The notes under the pieces: generated by a model
What the model saw: the letters and a program-made list of their open reading frames with translations, nothing else
What the model was told of the DNA's origin: nothing
Database searches by the model: none
Translations under genes and position numbers: made by a program
Origin: Magallana gigas
Taxonomy: Eukaryota
Assembly (NCBI RefSeq): GCF_963853765.1
Contig: NC_088855.1
Coordinates: 48,918,001 to 48,982,000, forward strand
DNA length: 64,000 nt
Reading direction: 5' to 3'
Shown: positions 3,001 to 30,604 of the stretch, piece by piece
How positions within the stretch are numbered: the first letter of the stretch is position 1
Layout: each line of letters opens with the position of its first letter

Positions 3001-3665
3001 ACAGGGGAAACCCTATTCTTGGTAAACATAACTTTTATATTATNNNNNNNNNNNNNNNNNNNNNNNNNNNNNNNNNNNNNNNNNNNNNNNNNNNNNNNNN
3101 NNNNNNNNNNNNNNNNNNNNNNNNNNNNNNNNNNNNNNNNNNNNNNNNNNNNNNNNNNNNNNNNNNNNNNNNNNNNNNNNNNNNNNNNNNTTGTAGGTTT
3201 GGTTGATCCATTGGGGATTAATATTGAGCCCACCTTAGATGGTTTGCCATACACCTCACTTCTGTACGGCAATGGTCCTGGTTACACATCTCCACGTCAG
3301 GATCTAACTGGAGTAGATACAGGTAATTCACCCCCCCCCCCCCCTCTGGTTCTACATCTGTCACTCAGACTGTCATCATCTCGCTCATGCACATGGCTTT
3401 CTTTAACATTTCACATATTGTGATTTTAGAAACAACAGACTTCATACAGCAGTCTGCCGTACCACTTGAATTCGACACACACAGCGGAGAGGATGTCGGG
3501 ATATACGCGCTGGGTCCCATGTCGCATCTGTTTCATGGCGTCCACGAGCAGCATTACGTCGCCCACGTGATTCAGTACGCTGCTTGTATTGGAGAGTATG
3601 CCAAAAATTGTCGCAAGAAATCTGGAACATTGAGAAGCGTTATTCACGGAAACCCAGAGGTTTAA
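1..3665 (+). CDS. ALPL: Alkaline phosphatase, tissue-nonspecific-like (ALP-1), multi-exon, 5' end outside the window; no hydrophobic C-terminal GPI signal
   Basis: Exons <1-26, 339-525, 610-779, 1626-1836, 1989-2129, 2830-3021, 3197-3322, 3430-3665, all GT-AG with matching phases. Motifs [19 protein letters not shown] (catalytic Ser 369-371), [54 protein letters not shown]. Symbol is family-level only. Confidence 0.95.
1335..1420 (+). mobile_element. tRNA-derived SINE-like / pseudo-tRNA head in an ALP-1 intron
   Basis: A-box-like TGGCTCAGTGG (1342-1352, continuing TTAGAGCA) and B-box GGTTCGATACC (1404-1414). The spacing is too long and no clean acceptor stem is visible for a functional tRNA. 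Confidence 0.6.
3044..3190. other. Assembly gap (147 N) inside an ALP-1 intron
   Basis: Run of N between the donor at 3022 and the acceptor at 3195-3196. The paralogous ALP-2 intron has no exon at this position. Confidence 0.99.
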
Positions 3666-5332: not shown

Positions 5333-6981
5333 CATGGGTGGAAGGGGTTTCCACTGCAGTTACCATAGTGAACAATATGTATGGAGCGGTGCGTACACCG
5401 GGCTTTCTCAAACTCGCACCTGTAAATTTAACACATTTTACAAATTACATTTTTTTTCTCAATAAGATGGTACATGTAAAACTGAAAAAAAAAGTTATAA
5501 TCATGAATAACATTATAATCATGTCAAAAAAGAAAAGAATAAGAAACGTTGATAAAGTGCGACCGTTAGATTTGGACGACTTTTGTTCGACTGATAACTA
5601 CATTATCGTAGCATTCTGATACTCTCTATTTTTGGAAGACGGAATCATTCATTCAGTATTATGGGGTGATCAAATACAGTCGGGAATTATCAAATCTATC
5701 GAAAAGCATTAGATTTTATCACCCAGATTGTCTTTGATCATCTCATAATATTCAAAGAATGATTTCTTTATTACTATTTCCAATTTTAACACTTTAAAAC
5801 AACATTATTTAAAAACCACTTTTTTATGTAGCACATGCTATGTATTACATGTACTACGCGGTGCAGCCAATACCGTTTTCGGTTATGCTATAAGACACGC
5901 CCATTTTGTGGCACTCATGTTTTAAGAAGTTATCGGATTTTAGGGTTCAACATTAATTCGTAATGTTATCACTGACAGAGACAGTTGAAAATGTAAATAT
6001 ATGGTATTCGAGGAAAGAATCAGAGAGATTTCTGTAGATATAATTTTTATCCGCTCAATCAAAGTATTTGTACATGTAATAAGGTACATGTATACCATGA
6101 TATATTTAATACTTACGGATTAGTGTAGGTTATCGTATCATTGCCACATACGGGGTTTGATGCAGCATCACATGCTTTAAAGGCAAGATTAAAACAGAAA
6201 AAGTCCAGCACAGCCTCGCTTCCGTGCAAGATAGGGGCAAGAGTGCTCGGAAGAGGGTGGCTCGTCACAACACCGCCAGGTGGCGCGGTGGTAGGCGGTG
6301 GGACGGTGGTCGTTGGACAAGCTGAGTGCGATGCTACGTGGATAGATTTGTCATCACAGTGAGCCTTGGAAAAATCACACCTTGATTGAAAAAAGATTAA
6401 ATTCATTATGTTTTTTGGGAGAAATTTTAAATATGAAAACCAGAATTGAGATTTGTTGCAATAACAAGACAAATGCATTAATTCCCCCGGGAATTTCACA
6501 CTTTTTCGCTGCAAAAAGTTACTTAAAGGCCTTGAACGCCTGACTCCTCCACCCCTCTAGCAAACAAAACTAAACTAAAACACAAACCCCCCTTTGAAAA
6601 AAATAAATTCTTGATCTACGTTCGGAAACTCTTTTTTTTAAAATCGTCTATTCCCATACACAGTGTAACATAAATTGTTTTACTATCAAAATGAAATACG
6701 TGTAAATATTGATGGGATATTTTATTATTGACCTGTTCCTGTAGGTGACGCCATTTGAGCCACACTCAGGGTTACTGCCATATTGATAACAATCCTCTTT
6801 AAGAATACTGGCACACGTGTTGAAATTAAAGAACTGGGCACTCGCCACTGTAAATAAATTCCATAATATATATACTAGTTTGTTGCATAACCTCATATTG
6901 AAAATGTACATTCGATAGGTTTTTTAAAAGTTACAAACCTGAAATTAGTAGAACTGGAGCCAGAAATATCAAAAGAGCCAT
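5332..6981 (-). CDS. Secreted two-domain Kazal-type serine protease inhibitor-like protein, 169 aa
   Basis: Exons 6981-6939, 6847-6733, 6380-6117, 5419-5332 (510 nt, GT-AG, phases 1/2/2). Signal peptide MALLIFLAPVLLISVASA; two six-Cys Kazal patterns (C-x7-C-x8/7-CG-x9-C-x6-C-x12-C) separated by a Thr/Pro-rich linker. Confidence 0.9.
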
Positions 6982-8130: not shown

Positions 8131-9979
8131 CGATTCGCTGGAAAGTCTCCAGAAATCCGAGAAACAGTGATTAATTTTCTATTAGGATTTGCAAATTTGT
8201 AAATTTCATTCGGCTAATTATGACATCCGGTAAAGCCAAAATTCATTTAATTCATATTATAACATTTGTTGACTTTGTTCAATTTTTTTCATTTTTTTTT
8301 TATTTTCTAGCTTTACATTATATACTTTGTAAATGATTTCGCTTTTCATCTTTTGTTCTGTTACATTTTCCGGTTCCGGCAAGTTATACCGGTATATCCA
8401 AGGGAACGTGTATTTATTTTGACAAACCAACCGTATACCTCAATCCAAAGAATACCGACCTCGTGATAAGTCCTTATTTACTGAAGCTTCCGGCGGTCAA
8501 TTGAATGTTATTGTTAGAAGCATTCGCGACATGCATAAACAATCGCTTACTAGATTTATTTCTGTTTTGATGAGATATCTTCGTGTATTTCCGGTTGGTT
8601 CTTACAAAATAGGTTTATGTCTATACAAGACAATTTGGTTCGATGATCTTTGTTATGAAATTCAAGATAGTAAATGAAACACATTAATGAAATTAAAACA
8701 CTGTTTCGATTTTTTTATTAGCTCAATATGACTTTACCCCCCCCCCCCCAATATGTAATTTAAAGTTATTTTTCATTTTCATTCATTTAATTTTCTCAAA
8801 CTGATTTTATTTTTAACAATATTCAAGTAGAGACAAGATGGTTATGCCGTAATAATGAGATATTTTTCGTAGTTAATTAAAAGTAATTTTTTATGGCGTT
8901 ATTCGACTTTCGTGTTCAATATCAGTCATCACAATGTCAAATAATGTACATATAAATTGTTGTCATTGTCACAGCAGGAGTATATATTTTATGTGAAGAG
9001 ATACTAGTTCCGTTGCCTCAGAATAATCGCCAGAATATTAAAAAGTTGAAGTAAAATGTTGAATCTAATATATAGCTTATTTCAGATATAAAGAATAATG
9101 TTCTTATAAAACCGGGTTGAGATTGAAATATGAATTAGCGGAAAGTTAAACGAATTTGCAATGTGAATTATGTTCTATCATAATTTCTTTTGGGATTTTA
9201 CGACCATGTCAGACACAACCGAATAAGCAGACAAAACACTCAATAATATTTAAGGATTTTCAAATAAAAAAGACTTGTTTGATTTTTAGAGTGTGGCTTT
9301 TTCTTGCATATATTGAAGTAAACTGGTTTCTCATGACAAGATGGTAAATCCTCAACACCTACTCGCAGAATGATGTACTCATTGTGGTAAAATCAGACAT
9401 TAGAAATAAATATTTAAGTCTGTGGTACAGTTTGAATAGCACACCGGTGATGCCTTTTACTAGTATTCAGTTTTCAAAACGGGTTATTAACTATGTTGAC
9501 TTTAGATATCATTGAGTATTCCGTAAAATCAAACAGAAATTCATTCGGGGGGGGGGGGGGGGGGTTATCAATGGTGCGTACGTACATGTATATATACATT
9601 CATAAAACAAAGAAATAAAATACTGTCTATACCAAATATCTGTTACAAATTCATAAGAAGCTGGATTTCGAAAAAAATCGACCCTTGTATATACTAGTAT
9701 ATATATGCCATTTTCTAAAATTTTTGGCTGGACGCATTTAGACATTATCGCTACCCATAGAACCCATCTTCATTGTATACATAGCCATGGGCGATGATCC
9801 GCATTAAAGACTACGAGAGGAAGTGAGCGGATATTAACCTTGGCTATTGAAGATGTTAAGAAATTCATGGTGTTCCAAGCAAATGAACTTATAGTACGGA
9901 GAACGTTTTGAATTCTGCTCCGTGTGTTCGTTTAAACCATTTAAATACATTTGGTTTGTGGACCGCCGTAGTAAGCAAA

Positions 9980-12900
9980 ATGTGGCGAAGGGTGTTTGTT
10001 GTGTTGCTGCCTATTTTCGGTAAGTTATTTTTTTATGTAATGAAAACTATATTTCGGGAATGTTAGGAACATGTAATTTATGAACTTAAAGAAAACATAT
10101 GCAATATGCATATAGGCATTGTTCTAGGGTTGTCCCGACGATTTTCAAGCCAGGCATTTGCAAGAGATTGTAAATGCATTGGTTGAGCAGCATAGTAGAT
10201 GGAAGCTGTAATACCTACGTTCTTGTACATTTGCCAGGACTGTAACGATCATAAGTTGAATCTCTGATTATTGTTCTTTTAGAACCTTTCATTTAGAGTT
10301 GCTCTATCAGGATCGTTCACCTATTACCTGTTTCTCAATTCAACATCAATGTTTGTTAAATAGCATAAAATTTGTGTGTTTTCATGCCTAGGCATGCGCT
10401 TTATACGGATTAAATGATGGGTGTATGAGCAGGACATCTAGTGTCTGGGCCGATAGAATTTACATTTCCAATCTAAATAGCATACATTTAAACCTGCTTC
10501 TATAGTGCAAACAAAAAAACCCCAATGAATATGAACTTTAAAAAGTAGACGATGTCAATGTTGGCACGACTTTTTTATAACGAGTTTTAAAGTTGTAATA
10601 AAATGGGCATGCAGTGTTCAATGCACTCATAGTGTACAACGCAGTTTGAAAAACTACGCAATTGAATTTTTCTTTCAAAGTATGTTAATTTTGAGCCCAA
10701 GTCAGCCCATTTTGAAAAAAAATAATAATTTCATTTCAAAGTGCATTATATATCGTGGATAGTTTAGTAATACTTTTACTTACATGTACAATAAATAATT
10801 GTTTAACCTTGTTTAGTTCAATATATAAACTTGTCATTCGTTATTAGGATTTCCATGTAACAATTACTTTTAAAAATGTAAAATCAATTTGTTTAAAAGT
10901 TTATTAGATTTGTTTTCTTTTAAAGTACAGTCAATAAAGCGCTTTTGTAAAATTATTATTCTTGATATTGTTTGTTGTCAGATGTATATGTAACTACTTT
11001 TTGTGTATATAGAACCAAACTGACTGTAAGGTGCCGTGGCTTGGGGTGCATATGGCTATGTTCACAAGTCTCTTGTCGTTGTCTTGACTTTAGGGCCGAG
11101 AGTCCGATACCCGCTGGTGGTGCATTTAGATTTTCCTTAAAACATCCGCCGTGTTCTATCTCGACATAGTATGGTTATGCTGTATAAATCTTCTGTATAT
11201 CATACAAATAGAGGAGCAGTGTGTATATAGAGAAAACGTGACAGAAGTCATGATAAATAATGATAATACCCCATCATATACATTTGACATTGTGAAGCTA
11301 TTTTTGTAGTCGGAGACGGTTTCCGTCTTGCCAAACCCACCATACTCTTCAGATCTAGGTTATATCACCTGTTCAAATAGATGATTAGTGATATCACCTA
11401 TTTCAATAAATGATATCACTAAATGATAATAAATACTAAAACTACGCCTAATACCATCGTTTGGTCAACTCTTTTTTTCAAAATCATCTTTATTTACAGC
11501 AAAGTTTATCCCTTTTCCAGTTTTTAACATATACTTAAATTTGTTTGCTGAATACAAGATGTTTAGGAGGTAAAGATGGGGGTGAGGGATTCTTTCAGTG
11601 ATCAATTTGAATTACGTACTGATGATTGAACTTTATCTTGGTTGTCCTCTCTCCGTTTTCAAAGATGGTTAATCATATTTCCATTGCTGTTTACAAGTTA
11701 TCACACTGTTAATGCGTTTGATTTAAACTGTATAATTTGCACAAAGTTTATAACTTTTGTAGCTTAACGGAAAATGCAGACATTTCTTTCTTTAACTACA
11801 TGCTTCCTATGCAGTTTTCTCGAAGTTCTTATCGGAAAAGTCCGAGAATTCATATAAAAAATGTGCGTATTTCAAATACATAAAAGAAACTACTTGTTAT
11901 GCAGAATAACATATCGTTGATTTAAAAGAAATAATAATCGATAAATCAACTCCCTTCAGTACCTCAGTACTTTGATTGTAGATGTATTTACATAAAATCA
12001 AGGTATGGAAGCATATTCGTAGTCTAGACAACCAAACATTATGGATATTGATCACTATTAATACTGCACGTTAATTTGTATAAAGATAGTTTTCTGATCT
12101 AAAGCAAACTAGATTTACACAAGCGTCAAAAGAATGTCCACAATTCATTTGTTTCCCTTTTATAAAATACGTATGCCTTAAAATGTTGAGTTGAAATGAT
12201 TGCATTACATTGTAACAATTTTCACAGATATACAAACAAAGCGAATTTTTTTTTTTACTGATTACTGAACAAAACATAAGAGACAAAGACAAACACACAA
12301 ACATACACTCATTCACTCACACACACATTCAAAGTGTACAAAGTCAAATCAAAGTACTGAAGAACTGATGGGAGCTGATTTTGTCGATGTTTATTTATTT
12401 TAAAATCACTAATATGTTATTTTGCATGACAAGTACATGTAGTTTCTAATTTGAATTACGCACATTTTTATAATTGAATTTTTGTACTTTTTCGACAAGA
12501 GTGTCGAGAAACCCCCATATGAATCATGTTAAATAATATTTAAAGATAAAATTAATTCAATCAAACTATGTATCAGTAATAGAAATATTTCTCGAAAATT
12601 GCATGGATCCAAGCAATATTGAACTCTAGTCTCGTTCAACCAAACGCTCGACTGACACCGTAAAACTCCGACAAGGATTTACGGAGACAGCCGAGCGTCG
12701 AGTTGAACGAGACCATTTTGAACTCTGGCTTAGGAATACATACGAGTCGTAAAAAAAATCATATGCTAGTAATCATCATTTTGAAGAAAAAAAAATCCAT
12801 TCTTAGTTATGCATACATGTAATTAAATTGTGTTTGGGTGATGAATTAAGGAGAGAGAGAGAAAAAAAAATACAAACCAATGTTATGCCAAAGTTATACA

Positions 12901-15900
12901 TGTAGACGCTTTAATAATTTAATAACATGTCGTAACTCCAAAACTATAAGCCTGCAATTCAATTCATTGTATGCTTAGCTGCTTCTTTCTAAATTTACAC
13001 CACTAAAGTATTATGGGGTGAAATTTCGATAAACTACTACCAATGACATTTTTTTAATGAATCTTCAATATTACATTCTTTGATTTGTTCTCAATTTACT
13101 TTATGTTTATATAATATTTATCTTGGAAAATATCAGTTCAAAAACATTTGTTAATGTAAGGCATACTTTCTTAATCGTCTTAAATGAACTTTTACTCCGT
13201 GGAGTTGATGTACTTGACTCTCTTAAATAGAATTTTTCACCGTGTCTTATGTCAGTTTATGCTTATAGTGCAAATTTCTGTTTTCAGTCTTATTTATATT
13301 GTGGTATACACCCTTGTCATCGGTCAAGAATTAAGCTTTGGCTTGTTTGGGTGCAGTTTTTGGATTTTCAAAATTCATCCTGCCGGCATAAGTTCATATT
13401 AAGTGCTTTTTACTGGAGCAATTTAGTCTTATTATCGCCATATACAAACAAACATTATTTTAAAGGGTTAAAAACAAGTAGTGCACGTTAAAATGTACCT
13501 TTAGAATAAAATTTGTTGTGATTGACATGCAGAGCGTGACGGTGTCAAGTAAAACACGTTCTTATCATTCTCGTCTACTGGAAAGGTCGAAATATTCTTG
13601 TCTTTTGGAACGATAATCAGATTAGAAATACATTTTATTTAGCATAATAAAAATAAATTCTTCTAAAACATTCTTATTAAACATGATATAACATTAATAG
13701 TAACGATCGTTTTTTAAATATTTTTTGTTATAATGCAAAATTATGCAAATTATGCAAAATACCAAACATTATATAATCCAGAGACACTTTTTGGGTGTTT
13801 TTAAATGGTATTGGAAATATATGAAACGCTAGCCACTTTAATGTATATGCATATTGTCTTAAAAGATTGTAATGGGTTCTTGTAACTTTTAATTTAAATA
13901 TTTCTTGAGCAAGTTTTAATCCCTGAAAAAATTTAAAGGAGAGTCCCTTATCCCAACGTGTCATATTCTGCATATGAGCTGCAATTTCTATTTGCATTTT
14001 TTATTTGAAAATTGAAATTTACCATTTCAGTGACAAAGCAATTACAAGTATGGTTGAAAAACTTGTATTGTGAATTGTTTCCTGAGAAAAGCCATAAAAA
14101 GACTGAAATTGAAGTAAAGTTACATTAATGCCATCCTGCACAAAAAATGAGGTAGCTAAATATACTCCATTATCATGCACGGATCCAGAGGGGGGGGGGG
14201 GGGGTCCGGGGGTCCGGACCCCCCCCCCCCCCCCTCGAATTTTGCCCAAAAAGGGGTTATCAGATTCGATTGTATAAACAAAATTGAAAAACCACCACTA
14301 TCCAGTATAGATCTGACAAGATGCCTATTAGGCTTGTCATTCCAAAAATTTGTGATGCAAAACAAAAGAAGAATGTTCAAGTCCTGCATCTTGAACTACT
14401 AGACCTGATAAGTCGGTTTGAAAGATTTTCACTACTGTTCTACAGTAACTTGCATGCAGTTGCATGTTCATCCACACTGGCCACAAAGAACTTATATCCA
14501 CCGTAAAAAAATATTTATATCCACTGTAGCAGGCGTTACATGTAAGTGCTTGTGTGGCGGCCATAAAATTACCCCCTTACTTCACTCTTAACAGTTATAC
14601 TTACTTTCTGGTCTTTCGAGATCATAAGTCTGTTGAAATTCAATGATTTTGAAAACAGAATGCCGCTTAAGCCGGTGCTCTGGGGGCCCTGGCAGAGTGG
14701 CATATTTCAGTACTGTCAATCAAACATGTACTAAATAAAAAAAAAAAAAATTAAAAAAATAAATATAATAGAAAAAATAGAAATGTCCTATTGTGGAGGC
14801 CTCCACGGGGCTAGAACTGGAAACACTTATATTTAATTAGCGGCTGACATCCACATTTCCTTGAAATAAGGTTGTATCTTTTACAATGCATCAATATGTT
14901 GGTAGGCTCTATCGGACCCCCCCCCCCCCCCTGGGAAAAATGTCTGGATCCGCGCCTGATTATGCTGATTTTTATATTCCTAAAAAAATATTAATATACA
15001 GAATCCATAAGTGCAATGTTCAGCATTGATTCACAAGAGTTGTCAAATATGTCAAAAAATATGTTGTGTTCCACGCAAAAGACTTTATGGCACAGTAAAC
15101 CTCTAGCTTTCAATCATTTTAAAAAATCAAGAAAAATGAACCTTTGGTTTGATGGCCGCATACGTAAGGGGTGTTTGTTGCATTGCTGCCTATTTTTACT
15201 CAGTGATATTTTGGTGTAATGAATATTCATATTGTGGGAATTTTAAACATATGTATTTTGATGTAAAAAAAAAAATAAAACCATACTATTTAGAAAAAAA
15301 TAATGTATGAGTTAGTTCTTACAATAATAATAAATTCATTAATGTCAATATTGTTGAGATTTACATAAGATAAAGCCGTGAAAATTTCATATTTTAAATG
15401 TTATTATAAAATCAAATTAAAAATTACTATGACAGATTGACTGAAAATACTGTATGACCTACTTCTACATCAATAACGACGGGGTCATCTCTCTGTGGTC
15501 CGTTTGTTTAGATGACTTTTCTCTGCCTCTGCTCTTATTGTCCAAAAGCTTTCAATAAGGCCTATGTGAGATATTGTTAATATTTGTTGAGCCATTGATA
15601 AAGATACGCAGTGAAACGGATTAAGATGGAAACTGTAATACCTACATCTGCTAGGACTTCAACTGTAAAACCTACAGTATTGTACATCTGCTAGGACTTT
15701 AACTGTAATACCTATATGTACATCTGTTAGGACTTTAACTGTAATACCTATATGTACATCTGCTAGGACTTTAACTGTAATACCTATATGTACATCTGCT
15801 AGGACTTTAACTGTAATACCTATATGTACATCTGCTAGGACTTTAACTGTAATACCTACATGTACATCTGCTAGGACTTTAACTGTAATACCTATATGTA

Positions 15901-18900
15901 CATCTGCTAGGACTTTAACTGTAATACCTACATGTACATCTGCTAGGACTTTAACTGTAATACCTATATGTACATCTGCTAGGACTTTAACTGTAATACC
16001 TACATGTACATCTGCTAGGACTTTAACTGTTATACCTACATGTACATCTGCTAGGACTTTAACTGTTATACCTACATGTACATCTGCTAGGACTTTAACT
16101 GTTATACCTACATGTACATCTGCTAGGACTTTAACTGTTATACCTACATGTACATCTGCTAGGACTTTAACTGTAATACCTATATGTACATCTGCTAGGA
16201 CTTTAACTGTAATACCTACATGTACATCTGCTAGGACTTTAACTGTTATACCTACATGTACATCTGCTAGGACTTTAACTGTTATACCTACATGTACATC
16301 TGCTAGGACTTTAACTGTTATACCTACATGTACATCTGCTAGGACTTTAACTGTAATACCTACATGTACATCTGCTAGGACTTTAACTGTAATACCTACA
16401 TGTACATCTGCTAGGACTTTAACTGTTATACCTACATGTACATCTGCTAGGACTTTAACTGTTATACCTACATGTACATCTGCTAGGACTTTAACTGTTA
16501 TACCTACATGTACATCTGCTAGGACTTTAACTGTTATACCTACATGTACATCTGCTAGGACTTTAACTGTAATACCTATATGTACATCTGCTAGGACTTT
16601 AACTGTTATACCTACATGTACATCTGCTAGGACTTTAACTGTAATACCTACATGTACATCTGCTAGGACTTTAACTGTTATACCTACATGTACATCTGCT
16701 AGGACTTTAACTGTAATACCTATATGTACATCTGCTAGGACTTTAACTGTTATACCTACATGTACATCTGCTAGGACTTTAACTGTTATACCTACATGTA
16801 CATCTGCTAGGACTTTAACTGTAATACCTATATGTACATCTGCTAGGACTTTAACTGTAATACCTACATGTACATCTGCTAGGACTTTAACTGTAATACC
16901 TATATGTACATCTGCTAGGACTTTAACTGTAATACCTACATGTACATCTGCTAGGACTTTAACTGCAATACCTACATTATTGTACATTTGCCACGACTTT
17001 AAGTGCGATACATACATTATTGATAATTCATCAAATAAATGAATGACATTCTTAATTTTGATACATAATTATAAGTCATAAACATATAAATTTCTGTTTC
17101 AAATAATATTTGTCAATTAATCAAACACTGAAAACTCATGAATTGTTGATTCATGTTATATATGACACTTACTTATAACTTAAATTGTTAAATTGTAAGT
17201 AAAAATTTAAATTGTTAATTTTTAAACTTTTAATGTACAGGTAACACATAATTTATATCATTATTTTTATGCATTTTATATGGTTGAGTATGGTATGAAG
17301 TCATATAAATCATCTAAAGTAGTTTCAAAATCATTTTTGAATCAGCAAAGAACAGGTAAAGATAAAAAAAAAATTGACCCTTCAATAAATCTGAGTATCT
17401 TTTTTGTTTACTTATAGTTTGGGTGTGAGTTGGGTCTTTATATACAAGTTGTATCATTTTACTTTGATGCTCTTTTAAATAAGGTATACATACAGTACAT
17501 GTACAGCATTGAAATAACAAAAACACGTAACAAATTGTTTAAAAATGCAGGGCTTTGTTCTGAGGATTGGAACAGGATGGCCAAAGAGACGCTCACTTCT
17601 GCAATCAAGATGAAACCAAACACCGGAGTGGCAAAAAACGTCATCCTCTTCATCGGAGATGGACTGGGGGTATCCACGCTCAATGCTGCAAGGATATACC
17701 GGGGACAGAAAAACAACAAGACTGGAGAAGAAACTGTGCTAGAGTGGGAAAAGTTTCCTTATGCCGCTTTCTCCAAAGTGAGGCTTTTAAAGAAGAGATT
17801 CTACCAAGTTACATAATGAAGTTGTTTCATTTCAGTTTCAACTTATGTCCTTAATATTGAGTTTTACAGTAAAAAGGACTATTAATTGTATGATACATAA
17901 TATTTGTTACAAGTATCTGAAAACTGTAATAAAAGCAAAGAGTAAAGATAAGTAACACTGCATATGGCACGTAAGACAAATGCTTATGTTTTATTTGTTT
18001 AGATTTATGGTGCGGACAAACAGATTCCCGATTCGGCGCAAACGGCGACCGCCATTCTAGGCGGGGTCAAGGTCAATTACAAAACTGTTGGGGTCACGGA
18101 CGCTGTCCCGGGTGAAGGCTGTGATAAACTGTTAGAACTCGGAGAAGCAGGGAAAGTGGTATCTGTTCTCAGGAAAGCCCTCAGTGAAGGTGAGTTAACA
18201 TATTCTTTCGATGATACACGAACAGAAACATGCAGCTTTTTCTATCAATTATTGCCATCGCTGATAATGGTTTGACATATGAAGGTAAGTCCACTGGAGT
18301 GGTCACCTCTACGAGGCTGACTCACGCGACTCCGGCCGCCACCTACGCCCACTCAGCTCACAGGAACTGGGAGTCGGATGTTGACGTCATTGATGAGGCA
18401 CGCGGGAAGTGTCGCGATATCGCCTACCAGCTGATCCACAACAACAGCGACATCCAAGTACGTTAAGGATTGTTTCTTTTTATAGCGTTTGTTGTTGTAT
18501 TTACGCCTTATAAAAATTCAAAAGGACAGTATTTGTAGTAGTTACCCCATATAATATTGTTGGTTATGTGCAGATACCCGATGGGCGTGGTCATAATGAC
18601 ACGAGGGAGCGTAGCTCCCGAGTGTCGTTATGACCACGCCCATCGGGTATCTGCACATAAACAACAATATCATATGGGGTAAGTTACTTGTACCATAGTT
18701 TACAATTATTCATTATATCTTATTATCATGGTAATATCGGGAGTGCACCTGCCTCTAAACAATACGGTGCCAATGCGTTGGTCTTTATATATGTAATTGT
18801 ACTTTGTGAATTTCCCAAATGACTTTCTATCCCCGACAAAGATTAATTATTCTTCCTTTTTTTTAAATCATAGCCCTAATGCATAGATCGACTTCTCATT

Positions 18901-21886
18901 GTTTTGATTTTATTTCATATTCATTCATTTTCCGACTTATAGTATCGATATTTGCTTCAAAGAATTAAACGTATTAACACAATTTCAAATGTACGAACCC
19001 TAAATTGTGCAATGCTTCTGTTTAAACAATTGAAATTAAATCTAAATTGATGAAGGTAATTATTTTTTTTAAATCTTATTTGATACTCTGTATCAAATTA
19101 TGTTTTTTAAAAGTGGCTGAAAAAATATGTACATATATATTTTGAACAAAATCAATCAATTTAAGCAAAAAAAAATTTATTTGAGAAATGCATGTCGCGA
19201 AACCGTGAATGGTTAATGTCAATTTCGATTGGCTACAGCTATTCACTCTGTCCACAAAACAAGTTTTCTATTCAAACGCTTTCCTATCACGTGATTGACT
19301 TTCTATAACACCTTTAAACAGGATACCCCTATTTCATTTAACACACGTTTCTCTACTTGTCCGCACACATGGAGAGGAATATTAAAATAGAGTCTTTCTG
19401 ACAAAGCCATTGCCGATATTGTTTTGTCTCGAGCTAAAAATGAGATTTATTCGACGAACTCAGTTAGTCGAGTCATTTATCCGTGTTGAGTTTTGGCAAT
19501 TTTGATCTGGAGGAAACTCTTACTGTTGTATACTATGGACGCGCTAAAACAACCTTGTTGATGTTGTTTTTACTCGAGATAGTGGGCGGAGTTTTAAAAA
19601 AGTGTGGGGTTTGCACAAATAACCCACACTTTTAACAATAGAAAACTCGCCAAGCTATGGTACAAAGGACTGTATCGTGCTGGAATCAATTACAGTGTCA
19701 CCACTTACAAAACGGAAAGACGATCTTAACTCAGTATAAAATAAACATTTTTACTGTGCATATATATATGGAAAACAAATGCAACTACGCCTTTCAAACT
19801 TTATTTGAATTGTTCGTAATTCTGACAAGAATTTATTCTTATATAACAAGTATACATATTCACGCGAAGTTTCACATCTATATACATGTATATTGAACTT
19901 AAGAAATATGAGCTGGTTTCATTAGTCACATATTGGCAATGCGATCATCGTTATTTTGCTGTCATTTACAGCACTGATCGAACTAACTCTGCATTCTCAC
20001 TGGTATAAAAGTAAACATGATAATGTAATTTACAATATGACACTTCGTGATGATCTATCATCTATCACGGTATGAGGGGTTTAAAAACGGACATTTCCTC
20101 TATCATTGCTTTGATAATCATTTCGAAATTCAGAACAGCGTATGCTTGCATATAGTGTACTGTATATGGTTTGTTTCTTGTCATTGAAGTTCTTAAGGTG
20201 CTTGTTTCAACTAGATTTTCCAAATATCGATAGAGTTCCTCCAATCAGTCCTTAAAGAATACGTTTGAAACAACTGTATGTTTATTGTTAAAAGTGGTTT
20301 CTAATAAGTAATCCCTTTGTTTTACCAAAGGTGATAATGTTGAAACAACCAATTTCTGTTTTGTTATTTTTATTTATTTTCACCTGTTAGGTACTTTTAG
20401 GTGGGGGGAGGAGAGCCTTCTATCCAACCAACTATTCTGACCCGGAAACAGGAAGAACGGACGTAAATAAAAGAAACGATACCTATAATCTTGTAGAAGA
20501 CTGGCTAAATATACAGAGAGAAAAGAACAGGAAGCACAAGTTTGTGTGGAAAAAAGACGACTTTGATAACATTGACGTAAACAACGTCGATTATGTCCTA
20601 GGTGAGCGAATGATGTGGAATCGGAGGAAAACCAGTAGCGAAAAATACGTTTAGGATCTTAGGCGAAACACAATTAGTTCATTATGTATTGTGTGTCCAT
20701 TGAAATCTAGTCTTAGTATACCAATAAAGAGTGGAAACTTTCTTTTAAATTTTCATCTATATATTTTCTAGGACTATTTAGTCCGTCACACATGGCGTAT
20801 GAAATAGAGCGCGACAAGACCGGAAATGGAGAACCTTCATTATCGGAAATGACGTCAAAAGCAATAAACATTCTTAAAAGAAACAAAGATAAAGGATTCT
20901 TCTTACTAGTTGAAGGTAATGATTATAGTCAAATATTGCAGTATGCAAGCGTCCGATAGTATGCTATATAATATAGCTTTTTCTAATAATCGACCGCATA
21001 ATTATATTTTATTTTCTTCTTTTAATGAAAGGCGGATTGATAGATATAGCTCACCATGACAGCCTCGCTAAGAAAGCACTAGAAGAAACTTTACAGTTTG
21101 AGGAGGCTGTGAAAGTAGCTGCATCAATGACCAATCAAGAAGATACTCTTCTGATTGTAACTGCAGATCACTCGCATCCATTTTCATTGGCTGGTTACAC
21201 TAAGCGCGGAAATCCTGTTTTGGGTTTGAAAACCTTTTTTATAAGTTGATATAAGAATCGACTGGAGATGAATGCAAATATGTTTATTGATCTTGTATAA
21301 CATTATCAATTCTTAGACGCAAGAAGTGCAATTGTTTCAAAACTAAAGACATGTTCGGTAACATATTTATGAGTGTATTTTATTCTGTAGGCTTGGTTGA
21401 TGAAGAATCTGCCAGAATTGAACCTCCTTTAGACAAGAAACCATATACGGCCCTTGTGTATGGCAATGGTCCTGGATATAAAGCCGATAGAGAAAATTTG
21501 ACGGGCGTAGACACTGGTAAAGGTCTTCTTGTAAAACCTCTTGCAGAAAAAATTCTATCGAAAATGATTTGCCATGCTCACATAAATGCATATTGATTCT
21601 ATTTTAAGCTGCTGACAACTACATACAACAGTCGGCAGTTCCTTTAGAATACGAAACGCACAGCGCGGAGGATGTCGGGATATTTTCTCAGGGTCCCATG
21701 TCGCACCTGTTTCATGGCGTCCACGAACAACACTACATAGCGCACGTGATCCAGTATGCGGCCTGTATCGGGGACTACAGAGAGAATTGTGATAGAGAGG
21801 AGAGAAGCACCAGCGGCTCTACAGTCCCGGAAGTACTCTGCTGGCTTCTACTCGCATCGTTCTTGGCTTCCAGAATAGGGACTTAA
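9980..21886 (+). CDS. ALPL: Alkaline phosphatase, tissue-nonspecific-like (ALP-2), complete, with signal peptide and hydrophobic GPI-type C-terminus
   Basis: Exons 9980-10019, 17551-17777, 18003-18189, 18285-18457, 20391-20601, 20772-20915, 21032-21223, 21391-21516, 21609-21886, GT-AG with consistent phases. N-terminus [17 protein letters not shown]; motifs [48 protein letters not shown]; tail [20 protein letters not shown]. Four internal exon sizes (187, 211, 192, 126) equal those of ALP-1. Exon 1 assignment is inferred from phase and signal-peptide character. Symbol is family-level only. Confidence 0.93.
11791..12533. mobile_element. MITE-like element with ~187-bp degenerate inverted arms
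   Basis: 11791-11977 aligns to the reverse complement of 12347-12533 (for example AATCAACTCCCTTCAGTACCTCAGTACTTTGATT vs AATCAAAGTACTGAAGAACTGATGGGAGCTGATT). Confidence 0.75.
12629..12713. mobile_element. 85-bp fold-back mini-element
   Basis: GTCTCGTTCAAC..ACGCTCG..CCGTAAA pairs with TTTACGG..CGAGCGT..GTTGAACGAGAC around a ~13-nt loop. Confidence 0.7.
14174..14958. mobile_element. G-tract MITE, 16-bp TIR, 5-bp TSD ATTAT (hAT5-like)
   Basis: TIRs CATGCACGGATCCAGA / TCTGGATCCGCGCCTG (2 mismatches); ATTAT on both sides (14169-14173, 14959-14963); subterminal poly-G/poly-C. Superfamily assignment is inferred. Confidence 0.8.
15060..15660 (+). pseudogene. Decayed duplicate of the ALP-2 first (signal-peptide) exon and flanks
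   Basis: GTGTTCCACGCAAA, TTTGGTTTG, GGGTGTTTGTTGCATTGCTGCCTATTTT and AGATGGAAACTGTAATACCTAC match 9870-10220 in the same order. The ATG and the GTAAG donor are lost. Confidence 0.75.
15633..17002. repeat. Minisatellite: 35 x 36-bp units (15703-16962) flanked by two 40-bp units and one 30-bp unit
   Basis: Unit CTGT(A/T)ATACCTA(C/T)ATGTACATCTGCTAGGACTTTAA; 1260 nt = 35 x 36; no spacers. Confidence 0.98.
18542..18682. repeat. Long near-perfect inverted repeat (~65-bp arms) with apex GGGAGC-GTA-GCTCCC, in an ALP-2 intron
   Basis: TATGTGCAGATACCCGATGGGCGTGGTCATAATGACAC pairs with GTGTCGTTATGACCACGCCCATCGGGTATCTGCACATA. Confidence 0.9.
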
Positions 21887-27639: not shown

Positions 27640-28630
27640 TGTTAAAAAATTGTATGATAATCATATGTTCATATGTTAATCAATACAATAATTTAAAATT
27701 AGATATTGCATCCTATCATATTTACAACATATATCATATAATACAATAAAATACCATAATAAACAATGATGAGATATGATATTGTTAACGTATGATATGA
27801 CATTGTATTGTGTTATACGTTATTGTATTTGATCAAATAATACAATATCATAATATAATAAACAATATAGTATTATATTACAATATCATATTACATAATA
27901 CATCATAACATTGAAACATATGATATTATATTGTATAATATAGTATGATATTGTATGATACTGTATCATTTTTGTTACATAATATGATATTGTATCATAT
28001 TATACAATGTTATTTGATACAACATTGTATCATATCAAATGATACAATATTATGTGATAAAGTAAAATATTATATAATACAATATTATATTATACATATT
28101 ATATCATATGATACAATAATATATTTAACAATATCATACAATACAATTTCATGTGAATCAGATGTGATAATAAATCATATTTTAAACCAATATCATATTA
28201 TACAATATCGTATGATACGATATTATATAATATAACAGTATCATATTATACAATTTCATGTGATATAATTCTATATTTCAGAAACTAATATCATATTATA
28301 CAAAATCGTATGATACAATATTATAGAAAATACAATATAGTATCATAGGATACAATATTATATTTGCAATATCTTATGTAATAGTATCATGTGATTAAAT
28401 AGTAAATTAATAATACAATATAATATTATACAATATTGTATCATAATATACAATACTATACATAACGATATCATGATACAATATCATAACATATCAAAAA
28501 AATTTATACAATATCATATCGTATCATATAACTTTTTATATTACATATGATATTATATTGTATCATATTAAACAATATTGTTTCATACCATACAAAACTA
28601 TATCATAGGAATCATGTTATATCATTTATC
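27640..28630. repeat. AT-rich low-complexity tract with ~5-bp periodic motifs (ATATC/TACAA/TATTA)
   Basis: Directly visible; accounts for the spurious I/Y-rich ORF 27945-28235. Confidence 0.85.
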
Positions 28631-28681: not shown

Positions 28682-30085
28682 TAGCATCCTTGATAATGGA
28701 GATCAGGCTCTGCATCTGAAGCAACCTCTGCGTTTCATTTATAATATAGTTAAATCAACTATGCAAGCTATCATCTATAAAACATGTGACATGTTCCAAA
28801 AAAATTAAACCTCATTCAGCATCCGAAACCTATGGCTCAGATTCAGCATTCAAGCCTGTCAGGTGCATCAGTATACATAAGACGCATCTCCATGCAAGTT
28901 TGGTGAAGTTCAGACCAGTAATAACTAAGATATCATCATCAGAGGGCACTAGCAATTAAAACCTTAACCTGCTCCAGCATCTGCAACCTTTGGCTCAGAT
29001 TCAACATCCATGCCTGTCAGGTGTATCTGTATCATAAGACACACCACCCATTCAAGTTTGGTGAAGTTAGGACCTGTAATAACTAAGATATATTTTATAG
29101 CATCCTTGATAATGGAGATCAAGCTCTGCATCTGAACCTTCCTCTGTGATTCATTCATACTACAGTTTAATCAACTATGCAAGTTTGAAAAAGTACTATT
29201 ATCTATTAAACATGTGACCTGTTCCAAAAAACTTAACCATATCCAGCATCTGAAACCTATTGCTCAGACTCAGCATTCAAACCTGTCAGGTGCATCAGTA
29301 TCATAAGACGCACCATCCATGGAAGTCTGGTGAAGTTAGGACAAGTAATAACTAAGATATAATCATCAGAGGGCACCTGTTTAAAAAACTTTAACCAGCT
29401 CTAAAAACCTTAACCTCCTTCAGCATCCGAAACCTATGGCTCAGATTCAGCATTTAAGCCTGTCTGGTGCATCAGTATCATAAGACGCGCCATCCATGCA
29501 AGTCTGGTGAAGTTAGGACAAGTAGTAACTAAGATATAATCATCAGAGGGCACCTGCAACAAAAACTTTAACCAGCTCTATAAACCTTAACCTTGTCCAG
29601 CATCCGAAACCTATAGCTCAGATTCAGCATTCAAGCCTGCCTGGTGCATCAGTATCATAAGACACACCATCCATGCAAGTTTGGTGAAGTACGGACCAGC
29701 AGTAACTTAGATATTGCTATCAAAGGGCACCTGCAACAAAAACTTTAACCAGCTCCAAAAACCTTAACCTCCTCCAGCATCCGCAACCTATAGCTAAGAT
29801 TCAGCACTCAAGCCTGTCTGGTGCATCAGTATCATAAGACACACCATCCATGCAAGTTTGGTGAAGTACAGACCTGCAGTAACTTAGATATTGCTATCAA
29901 AGGGCACCTGCAACAAAAACTTTAACCTGGTCTAACAATCTTAACCTCCTCCAGCATCTGAAATTTAGGACTCAGATTCAGCATCCAAGTCTTTCAAGTC
30001 CATAAGTAGGTCCAGATGCATCATCCATGCAAGTTTGGTGAAGATAGGACAAGTAATAGCTTAGATACAGGACCTGCAACAAAAA
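28682..30085. repeat. Satellite-like tandem array, 177-bp monomer
   Basis: The (C/T)CAGCATC anchor recurs at 29243, 29420, 29597, 29774, 29951 (177-bp steps). The left part is irregular, with a variant block at 28682 and 29098. Confidence 0.93.
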
Positions 30086-30182: not shown

Positions 30183-30604
30183 CAGGCACGTAGCATCGTT
30201 TTTGAAAGTGGGGGGGCCAGACCCATCCAAAAAATCTTGACAAGCAAAAAAAAAAAAAAAAAAAAAAAAGGGAATTTAAAGTTTCCAAAAATCTTCAAAA
30301 TCCTAATCCGTGGGGGGGGGGACTCAACTATACTTCAAAAAACAAAATTCTTCCCTCCAAATCATGAAATTCCTAATCCGTGGGGGGGGGGGTTATTCAA
30401 TTTGACTACTCATTTCCTTATTTTCATCTCAATTTTTTACTAACTTCCAAAAAAGTGGGGGGGGGGGGGGGCCCAACTCCATTATAGTTCATTTTTTTAT
30501 ATGTAAATTTTAAAAAATTTGTTGCTGCGAGAAAAAGTGGGGGGGCCAGGCCCCCCCCCCCTGGCCCCCCCCCCCCCCCCCCCCCCCCCGATGCTACGTG
30601 CCTG
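30183..30604. mobile_element. G-tract MITE, perfect 16-bp TIR, 5-bp TSD CATGT (hAT5-like)
   Basis: CAGGCACGTAGCATCG / CGATGCTACGTGCCTG; CATGT at 30178-30182 and 30605-30609. Superfamily assignment is inferred. Confidence 0.88.

What the first reader, a model, noticed from the sequence alone, without database searches (positions are those of the whole stretch)
10206..17002. Birth of a minisatellite caught in place: the single-copy 40-bp ancestor is 5.4 kb upstream of the 35 x 36-bp array
Seen: 10206-10245 CTGTAATACCTACGTTCTTGTACATTTGCCAGGACTGTAA is single-copy. The array's outer units (15663-15702, 16963-17002) are also 40 bp and closely match it, and both loci share the left flank AGATGGAA(G/A). 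The 35 inner units carry a 4-bp deletion giving 36 bp and creating the palindrome TACATGTA. Inference: segmental duplication, then monomer duplication, a 4-bp deletion and rapid recent expansion, so the full ancestry is readable at one locus.
Basis: seen in the sequence. Interest (0 to 1): 0.72.

Follow-up and report, generated by a model that had tools for sequence, protein, structure and literature searches.

The report
Oyster intron minisatellite with unexpanded paralog
A 36-base repeat copied 35 times in the first intron of an oyster alkaline phosphatase gene has one unexpanded sister copy 5.4 kb upstream, left by an old duplication of exon 1 and its surroundings; it is a clear example of ordinary minisatellite growth, not a new kind of element.

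Summary
There are 35 units of 36 bp at 15703-16962. They are bracketed by diverged 40-bp units at 15663-15702 and 16963-17002, a 30-bp unit at 15633-15662, and a half unit at 17003-17022. A single 40-mer at 10206-10245 is 82.5-87.5% identical to the outer units.

In the 564-Mb assembly the unit, its core and the flank/unit junction occur only at these two places. It is therefore not a mobile element.

The two sites belong to a wider collinear duplication: 9850-10245 matches 15046-15277 plus 15538-15662. Copy A carries what I infer to be exon 1 of the second alkaline phosphatase gene (ATG 9980, donor 10020, in phase with exon 2 at 17551). Copy B is a decayed pseudo-exon 1. Everything lies in intron 1.

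"Ancestor" and "birth caught in place" overstate the case. The solo copy is a sister, not a parent. The two outer units differ from each other as much as each differs from the solo copy, so the first tandem duplication is about as old as the segmental duplication. Only the spread of the 36-bp variant looks recent, and the palindrome is present in only 24 of the 35 units.

Copy-number polymorphism and sister species could not be tested. This is an ordinary, probably neutral, intronic minisatellite.

The parts
9850..10019 (+). Copy A of the duplicated segment, upstream part. It holds the inferred 5' UTR and exon 1 of the second alkaline phosphatase gene: ATG at 9980, 13 codons plus 1 base, hydrophobic signal-peptide start.
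   Evidence: GTAAGT donor at 10020. Phase 1 fits exon 2 at 17551. An RNA contig of run X15 at depth 47.6 covers 9975.
10020..17550 (+). Inferred intron 1 of ALP-2. It contains the solo 40-mer, copy B, the array and several dispersed repeats.
   Evidence: GT at 10020-10021 and AG at 17549-17550, with matching phase. No spliced read was seen, so this is inferred.
10130..10205 (+). Copy A, middle block and shared left flank (AGATGGAAG at 10197-10205).
   Evidence: Aligns to 15538-15632, z = 7 against 300 shuffles, none reaching the observed score.
10206..10245 (+). Solo, unexpanded 40-bp unit.
   Evidence: 33/40 and 35/40 identity to the outer units. It is the only other genomic site of the core and of the junction. 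It lies within a contig of another individual that shows only 4 differing letters, none listed in the 40-mer (run X10).
15046..15277 (+). Copy B, a pseudo-exon 1. The start codon is lost in a 10-bp gap, the GTAAGT donor is lost, and a stop lies in the corresponding frame.
   Evidence: 64% identity over 253 bp, E = 2e-18. 75% over 110 bp, and the only other genomic match. Sequence read. No RNA depth.
15538..15632 (+). Copy B, middle block and left flank (AGATGGAAA at 15624-15632).
15633..15662 (+). First array unit, 30 bp, with an internal 10-bp gap between two TACA.
15663..15702 (+). Outer-left 40-bp unit, closest to the inner units (35/36).
15703..16962 (+). 35 inner units of 36 bp in four sequence variants (15, 10, 9 and 1 copies), interspersed.
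16963..17002 (+). Outer-right 40-bp unit.
17003..17022 (+). Terminal partial unit: the first 20 bases of a unit, 17/20 matching the outer-right unit.
   Evidence: Read.
14342..14959 (.). Dispersed repeat (transposon copy) that ends just left of copy B. Not part of the duplication.
   Evidence: Copies of 88-93% identity on other chromosomes.
17054..17281 (.). Dispersed short repeats directly right of the array. They probably explain why paralogy with copy A ends there.
   Evidence: Many copies genome-wide on both strands. The right flanks are no more alike than shuffles.
17551..17780 (+). Exon 2 of ALP-2, the start of the alkaline phosphatase domain.
   Evidence: Pfam PF00245, E = 6e-14. Sequence.

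Best explanation
This is a locus-specific, AT-rich (36% G+C) minisatellite in intron 1 of the second of at least three tandem alkaline phosphatase genes of an oyster. An old intragenic duplication copied about 400 bp, comprising exon 1, its upstream 130 bp and the first 225 bp or so of intron 1, to a site further down the same intron. The copied intron piece contained a 40-bp sequence. In copy A it stayed single. In copy B, which decayed to a pseudo-exon, it became tandem early, reaching at least three to four 40-bp units that are now 15% apart. Later one outer-left-type unit lost 4 bases in its centre. That 36-bp variant spread to 35 copies by replication slippage and/or unequal exchange, partly in multi-unit steps, leaving the older diverged units at the array edges. 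The array is most likely neutral intronic DNA. Shown: the array, its uniqueness in the genome, the collinear paralogy and the descent of the inner units from the outer-left type. Inferred: the intron assignment, the order and mechanism of events, and neutrality.
For: Array and unit structure. Genome-wide uniqueness of the 36-mer (35 hits, all here), of the 19-nt core (array plus solo only) and of the 22-nt junction (2 hits). Collinear paralogy 9850-10099 to 15046-15277 (E = 2e-18; z = 30) and 10130-10196 to 15538-15612 (z = 7). These are the only two genomic copies. Exon 1 reading: ATG 9980, GTAAGT at 10020, phase fits the acceptor at 17550 and gives a hydrophobic signal-peptide-like N-terminus; Pfam PF00245 on the downstream exons. 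Copy B lacks the ATG and the donor. Unit distances: solo to outer-left 33/40, solo to outer-right 35/40, outer-left to outer-right 34/40, inner to outer-left 35/36, inner to outer-right and to solo 32/36. Degenerate edges and a truncated terminal unit are what a homogenised core with older edges predicts. Four unit variants are interspersed irregularly, and a six-unit block occurs twice, which points to multi-unit exchange. In another individual's assembly, copy A and copy B are both present and a contig stops inside the outer-left unit, as expected where a repeat begins (run X10). No Rfam family, no unusual fold and no credible protein family for the unit.
Against: No spliced RNA read joins 10019 to 17551. 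The polyA raw-read sample gave zero depth on exon 1, so the intron assignment rests on sequence logic and one RNA contig. The 40-mer (12.5-17.5% different) is less diverged than the neighbouring paralogous DNA (25-36% different). The binomial tail for 5 or fewer differences in 40 is 0.04 to 0.001, before correcting for choosing the best of several units. This could mean gene conversion or constraint rather than simple neutral descent. Copy number and array integrity were not checked with reads, because the reads tool turns away long repeats and I did not send the array. No sister-species locus was seen.
Confidence: 0.78

Rival explanations
1. The direction is reversed. Copy B, nearer exon 2, is the original exon 1 region, and copy A is the later duplicate that took over as the working first exon. 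Alternatively, the ancestor already had two or more tandem units and copy A collapsed to one. On either reading the solo copy is not an ancestor, and may even be a reduced descendant.
For: The outer-left and outer-right units are as far apart (6/40) as either is from the solo copy (5-7/40), so tandem status is as old as the A/B split. At the six sites where the outer units differ, the solo copy agrees with outer-right at four and outer-left at two, so it looks like a sister, not a parent.
Against: Nothing in one genome polarises the duplication. Copy A shows no significant trace of a second unit to its right (right-flank score below the shuffle mean).
Confidence: 0.35
2. The 40-bp motif is a functional intron-1 cis-element. 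It contains a CANNTG box in every unit. It was kept in both duplicates by selection, and the 37-copy array acts as an expression-modifying VNTR of the phosphatase gene.
For: The motif plus its 9-bp left flank is better conserved between A and B than the adjoining paralogous DNA. It lies in a first intron about 550 bp before exon 2.
Against: The excess conservation is marginal once the choice among several units is allowed for. No comparative or expression data exist. Copy B is otherwise decaying. Intronic minisatellites are reported as very common in this genome by earlier notes of this scan, which I did not check.
Confidence: 0.07
3. The repeat unit derives from a transposable element, and the array is a transposon-internal or transposon-end tandem repeat.
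For: Dispersed repeats abut copy B on both sides, at 14342-14959 and 17054-17281. Transposon-derived tandem repeats are common (PMC3389668).
Against: The 36-mer with up to 3 mismatches, the 19-nt core with up to 1 and the junction 22-mer with up to 2 occur nowhere else in 564 Mb. 15000-15632 matches only itself and copy A. Other genomic copies of the neighbouring repeat match no further than 14959-14965, short of copy B.
Confidence: 0.03
4. The array length or the array itself is an assembly artefact.
Against: Four unit variants are interspersed in an irregular order with diverged edge units, which is unlike a collapsed or padded repeat. An independent individual's contig breaks exactly at the array's left edge.
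Confidence: 0.03

Closest known systems
[quoted passage not shown]
   Same: A locus-specific minisatellite whose unexpanded form can be compared with the array. The array ends in an incomplete terminal unit (17003-17022), the key feature that model predicts.
   Different: There the single-copy state is the orthologous allele or locus. Here it is a paralog inside the same intron. The solo copy's only short direct repeat (CTGTAA, 6 bp) is spaced 34 bp apart. That predicts a 34-bp period, not the observed 40.
Haber and Louis 1998 model: a unit flanked by 5-10 bp direct repeats is duplicated by slippage or unequal crossing-over (as summarised in PMC3389668)
   Same: The solo 40-mer begins and ends with the same hexamer.
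   Different: The hexamers lie inside the 40-bp unit, not around it, so the expected period does not fit. The initiating event cannot be reconstructed.
Intronic minisatellite VNTRs of animal genes (for example the human VNTR survey, PMC8096271)
   Same: Unit of tens of bases, tens of copies, in an intron, with interspersed unit variants and degenerate edges.
   Different: Polymorphism and expression effects were not tested here. The unit is AT-rich, not the GC-rich type of classical hypervariable human loci.
Transposon-derived tandem repeats (PMC3389668; PMC6947457)
   Same: Lies among transposon copies in an intron.
   Different: The unit has no dispersed copies in the genome.
Splice-junction minisatellites of oyster introns
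   Same: Same genome, same habit of filling introns with tandem copies of local sequence.
   Different: This unit contains no exon/intron boundary. It starts about 186 bp (copy A) or 350 bp or more (copy B) beyond the real or former donor site.

Membership tests
Minisatellite (locus-specific tandem repeat) | Unit of roughly 10-100 bp in a head-to-tail array | tested here: met
   Period 36, 37 copies, 97% matches. 35 in-register units.
Minisatellite (locus-specific tandem repeat) | Confined to one locus, not dispersed | tested here: met
   All 35 genome-wide hits of the unit are in this array. The core and junction occur only here and at the solo site.
Minisatellite (VNTR in the strict sense) | Copy number varies between individuals | not testable with these tools
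   The reads tool turns away long repeats, so the array was not sent. Short-read contigs cannot count units. One foreign contig ends at the array edge.
Taylor-Breden birth model | Incomplete terminal repeat unit | tested here: met
   17003-17022 is the first half of a unit, 17/20 matches.
Taylor-Breden / Haber-Louis birth models | Short direct repeats in the progenitor at a spacing equal to the repeat period | tested here: not met
   The only direct repeat of 5 bp or more around the solo copy is CTGTAA at 34-bp spacing. None occurs at 40 or 36.
Transposon-derived tandem repeat | Unit homologous to part of a dispersed element | tested here: not met
Splice-junction minisatellite | Unit spans an exon/intron boundary | tested here: not met
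   The unit lies well inside the intron in both copies.
Coding tandem repeat | Open frame with relatives or expression | tested here: not met
   The 452-codon minus-strand frame over 15659-17017 is open because the period is a multiple of three. Pfam gives only composition-type hits with no accepted stretch.

The most novel reading that the evidence does not exclude
The 40-bp motif is a selectively kept intron-1 regulatory element of the alkaline phosphatase gene. It survived in both duplicates at 82-88% identity while neighbouring paralogous DNA fell to 64-75%. Its amplification to about 37 copies makes the array a natural dosage series of that element, tuning ALP-2 expression between individuals.
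Probability: 0.07. Interest if true: 0.5.

Novelty: new member of a known kind. Interest (0 to 1): 0.22.

Why it matters
It is a clear worked example. Within one intron, an unexpanded paralog serves as an outgroup for a minisatellite. Three layers can be told apart: old 40-bp units at the edges, a 4-bp loss, and a young homogenised 36-bp core. A transposon origin can be excluded genome-wide. It also reveals a decayed duplicate of exon 1 inside intron 1 of an oyster alkaline phosphatase gene. It does not change what is known about how minisatellites arise, and the initiating event remains unreadable.

Tried and rejected
- **Transposon origin:** rejected by three genome-wide pattern searches and two DNA searches.
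- **Structured RNA or hairpin-driven instability:** no Rfam family at 9000-18000. DNA folds of the units are no better than shuffles, so the palindrome gives no notable hairpin.
- **Coding repeat:** rejected.
- **Paralogy beyond the 40-mer to the right (10246+ against 17003+) and upstream of 9850:** no better than shuffles.
- **Homology of copy A to the two upstream alkaline phosphatase genes:** none at DNA level.
- **Orthologous loci:**
  - The word search with the exon 2 frame found only unspliced genomic fragments, 76-99% identical.
  - Two metagenome scans with the unit core and with the junction found nothing.
- **Bacterial-type promoter scan:** irrelevant for this animal gene and ignored.
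- **Joined protein model:** Exons were searched singly by reference.
Full report
**Observation**

The window carries one strong minisatellite. Tandem Repeats Finder gives 15643-16977, period 36, 37.0 copies, 97% matches.

- A search with the unit finds 35 in-register copies from 15703 to 16962, each with at most two mismatches, against none in 100 shuffles.
- Reading the edges and aligning them shows older, longer units:
  - 40 bp at 15663-15702 and at 16963-17002;
  - a 30-bp unit at 15633-15662 with an internal 10-bp gap;
  - the first half of a further unit at 17003-17022.
- The 40-mer at 10206-10245 matches the two outer units at 33/40 and 35/40.
- Both sites are preceded by AGATGGAA plus a purine.
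- The inner units lack four central bases.

**Is it a mobile element?**

No. The window is C3:48918001-48982000 of a 564-Mb, 29-contig assembly. Sequencing-run labels identify it as oyster.

| Pattern searched genome-wide | Result |
|---|---|
| 36-mer, up to 3 mismatches | 35 hits, all in this array |
| 19-nt core, up to 1 mismatch | array plus solo site only |
| 22-nt flank/unit junction, up to 2 mismatches | exactly these two places |

The reversed-pattern controls gave at most one hit.

**The two sites are parts of a larger duplication**

- A relaxed local alignment shows that 9850-10099 matches 15046-15277 (64% over 253 bp, E = 2e-18).
- The best 110 bp are 75% identical and are each other's only genomic match.
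- 10130-10196 also matches 15538-15612, directly before the shared flank.
- Against 300 shuffles the two blocks score z = 30 and z = 7, with no shuffle reaching either.
- Sequence to the right of the 40-mer and upstream of 9850 is no more alike than chance.
- Copy B is bounded by dispersed repeats: a transposon copy ending at about 14959, and short repeats from about 17054. This probably explains the loss of right-hand paralogy.
- About 260 bp (15278-15537) are present only in copy B.

**Gene context**

Pfam places alkaline phosphatase (PF00245) on the frames at 17430-17816, 18230-18466 and 1488-1853.

- A six-frame comparison maps one gene ending at 3662 and a second from 17553 to 21835.
- A third lies upstream of the window (loci L048 and L049).
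- A Kazal-type frame lies on the other strand at 6113-6514.

Copy A contains an ATG at 9980, followed by 13 mostly hydrophobic codons and one base, then GTAAGT at 10020. The exon that begins after the AG at 17549-17550 starts with two bases that complete that codon and continues in the phosphatase frame.

I therefore infer that 9980-10019 is the coding part of exon 1 and that 10020-17550 is intron 1. Support from RNA is thin:

- An RNA contig of run X15 at depth 47.6 covers 9975, where the surrounding bins have depth about 2.
- The sampled polyA raw reads of X24 gave no depth there, and no junction read was seen.

Copy B lacks the ATG (a 10-bp gap), lacks the donor, and runs into a stop in the corresponding frame. 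It shows no RNA depth. It is a pseudo-exon 1.

**History read from the units**

| Comparison | Matches |
|---|---|
| Inner consensus vs outer-left | 35/36 |
| Inner consensus vs outer-right | 32/36 |
| Inner consensus vs solo | 32/36 |
| Outer-left vs outer-right | 34/40 |
| Solo vs outer-left | 33/40 |
| Solo vs outer-right | 35/40 |

- The 36-bp form descends from an outer-left-type 40-mer by a 4-bp loss.
- At the six sites where the outer units differ, the solo copy sides twice with outer-left and four times with outer-right. It has three changes of its own.
- The tree is therefore star-like. The first tandem duplication in copy B is about as old as the A/B split, and the ancestor may already have been tandem.
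- Only the inner 35 units, with three variable sites in all, look young.
- Their four variants (15, 10, 9 and 1 copies) are interspersed irregularly, and a six-unit block occurs twice. This fits slippage or unequal exchange in steps of one to several units, with old units stranded at the edges.

The solo copy is thus an unexpanded sister and a useful outgroup, not the ancestor. The direction of the segmental duplication is open.

**An oddity**

The 40-mer differs by 12.5-17.5% between copies, while the adjoining paralogous DNA differs by 25-36%.

- The binomial tail for five or fewer differences in 40 is 0.04 to 0.001, depending on the flank rate used.
- The best of several units was chosen for the comparison, so this is marginal.
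- Gene conversion between the copies or weak constraint could explain it.
- I give the regulatory-element reading about 7%.

**Birth models**

The two published models are summarised in PMC3389668.

- One predicts an incomplete terminal unit. This is met at 17003-17022.
- Both require short direct repeats at the spacing of the period. The only such repeat at the solo site is a hexamer spaced 34 bp, not 40, so this is not met.
- The initiating event cannot be reconstructed.

**Other checks**

- No Rfam family.
- No fold beyond shuffles.
- The long minus-strand frame across the array is open only because the period is a multiple of three.

In another individual's contigs (run X10), copy A with the solo unit is present with few differences. 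Copy B is also present, and that contig stops inside the outer-left unit, as expected at the edge of a repeat.

**Limits**

Copy number and assembly accuracy are therefore unchecked.
No sister-species locus was examined.

**Verdict**

This is an ordinary, probably neutral, locus-specific intronic minisatellite with an unusually readable local history, and a new member of a known kind.

Noticed in passing
window 15046-15277: A decayed duplicate of exon 1 (pseudo-exon: start codon and splice donor lost) of the alkaline phosphatase gene lies inside that gene's own intron 1. Genome-wide, its only match is the real exon 1 region at 9850-10099.
   Followed up: yes
L048/L049 and window 1-21835: At least three alkaline phosphatase genes lie in tandem on the + strand. 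One ends at L049:604 (position 10604 of the joined L048+L049 stretch). One runs from near the end of L049 to window 3662. One runs from 9980 to 21835. A Kazal-type inhibitor frame lies on the - strand at 6113-6911, between the last two.
   Followed up: partly
whole window outside 15633-17025: The octamer TACATGTA occurs 22 times where a third-order Markov model expects 3.2. ATGTACAT occurs 11 times against 3.4 expected. The palindrome that the 4-bp loss created is therefore a generally over-represented word here. This is the subject of another first-stage note, at 11891-12441.
   Followed up: partly
window 11740-12137 and 12337-12933: Very high-copy dispersed repeats inside intron 1. DNA word depth reaches 175,000 against about 25 for single-copy sequence, and they are also abundant in RNA libraries.
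   Followed up: no
window 14187-14236: Facing poly-G and poly-C runs attract many RNA reads with opposite-strand joints. This is probably a low-complexity mapping effect.
   Followed up: no
window 29226-30067: A tandem repeat of period 177 bp, 4.8 copies, 87% matches. Nearby are a 39-base C run at 30551-30589 and a long AT-rich compound microsatellite at 27837-28607.
   Followed up: no
window 3044-3190: A run of 147 N inside an exon region of the first alkaline phosphatase gene.
   Followed up: no
window 12934-13132 and 13262-13798: In the DNA contigs of another individual (run X10), the first stretch has no depth and a contig skips 535 bases across the second. These are likely indel polymorphisms in intron 1.
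   Followed up: no
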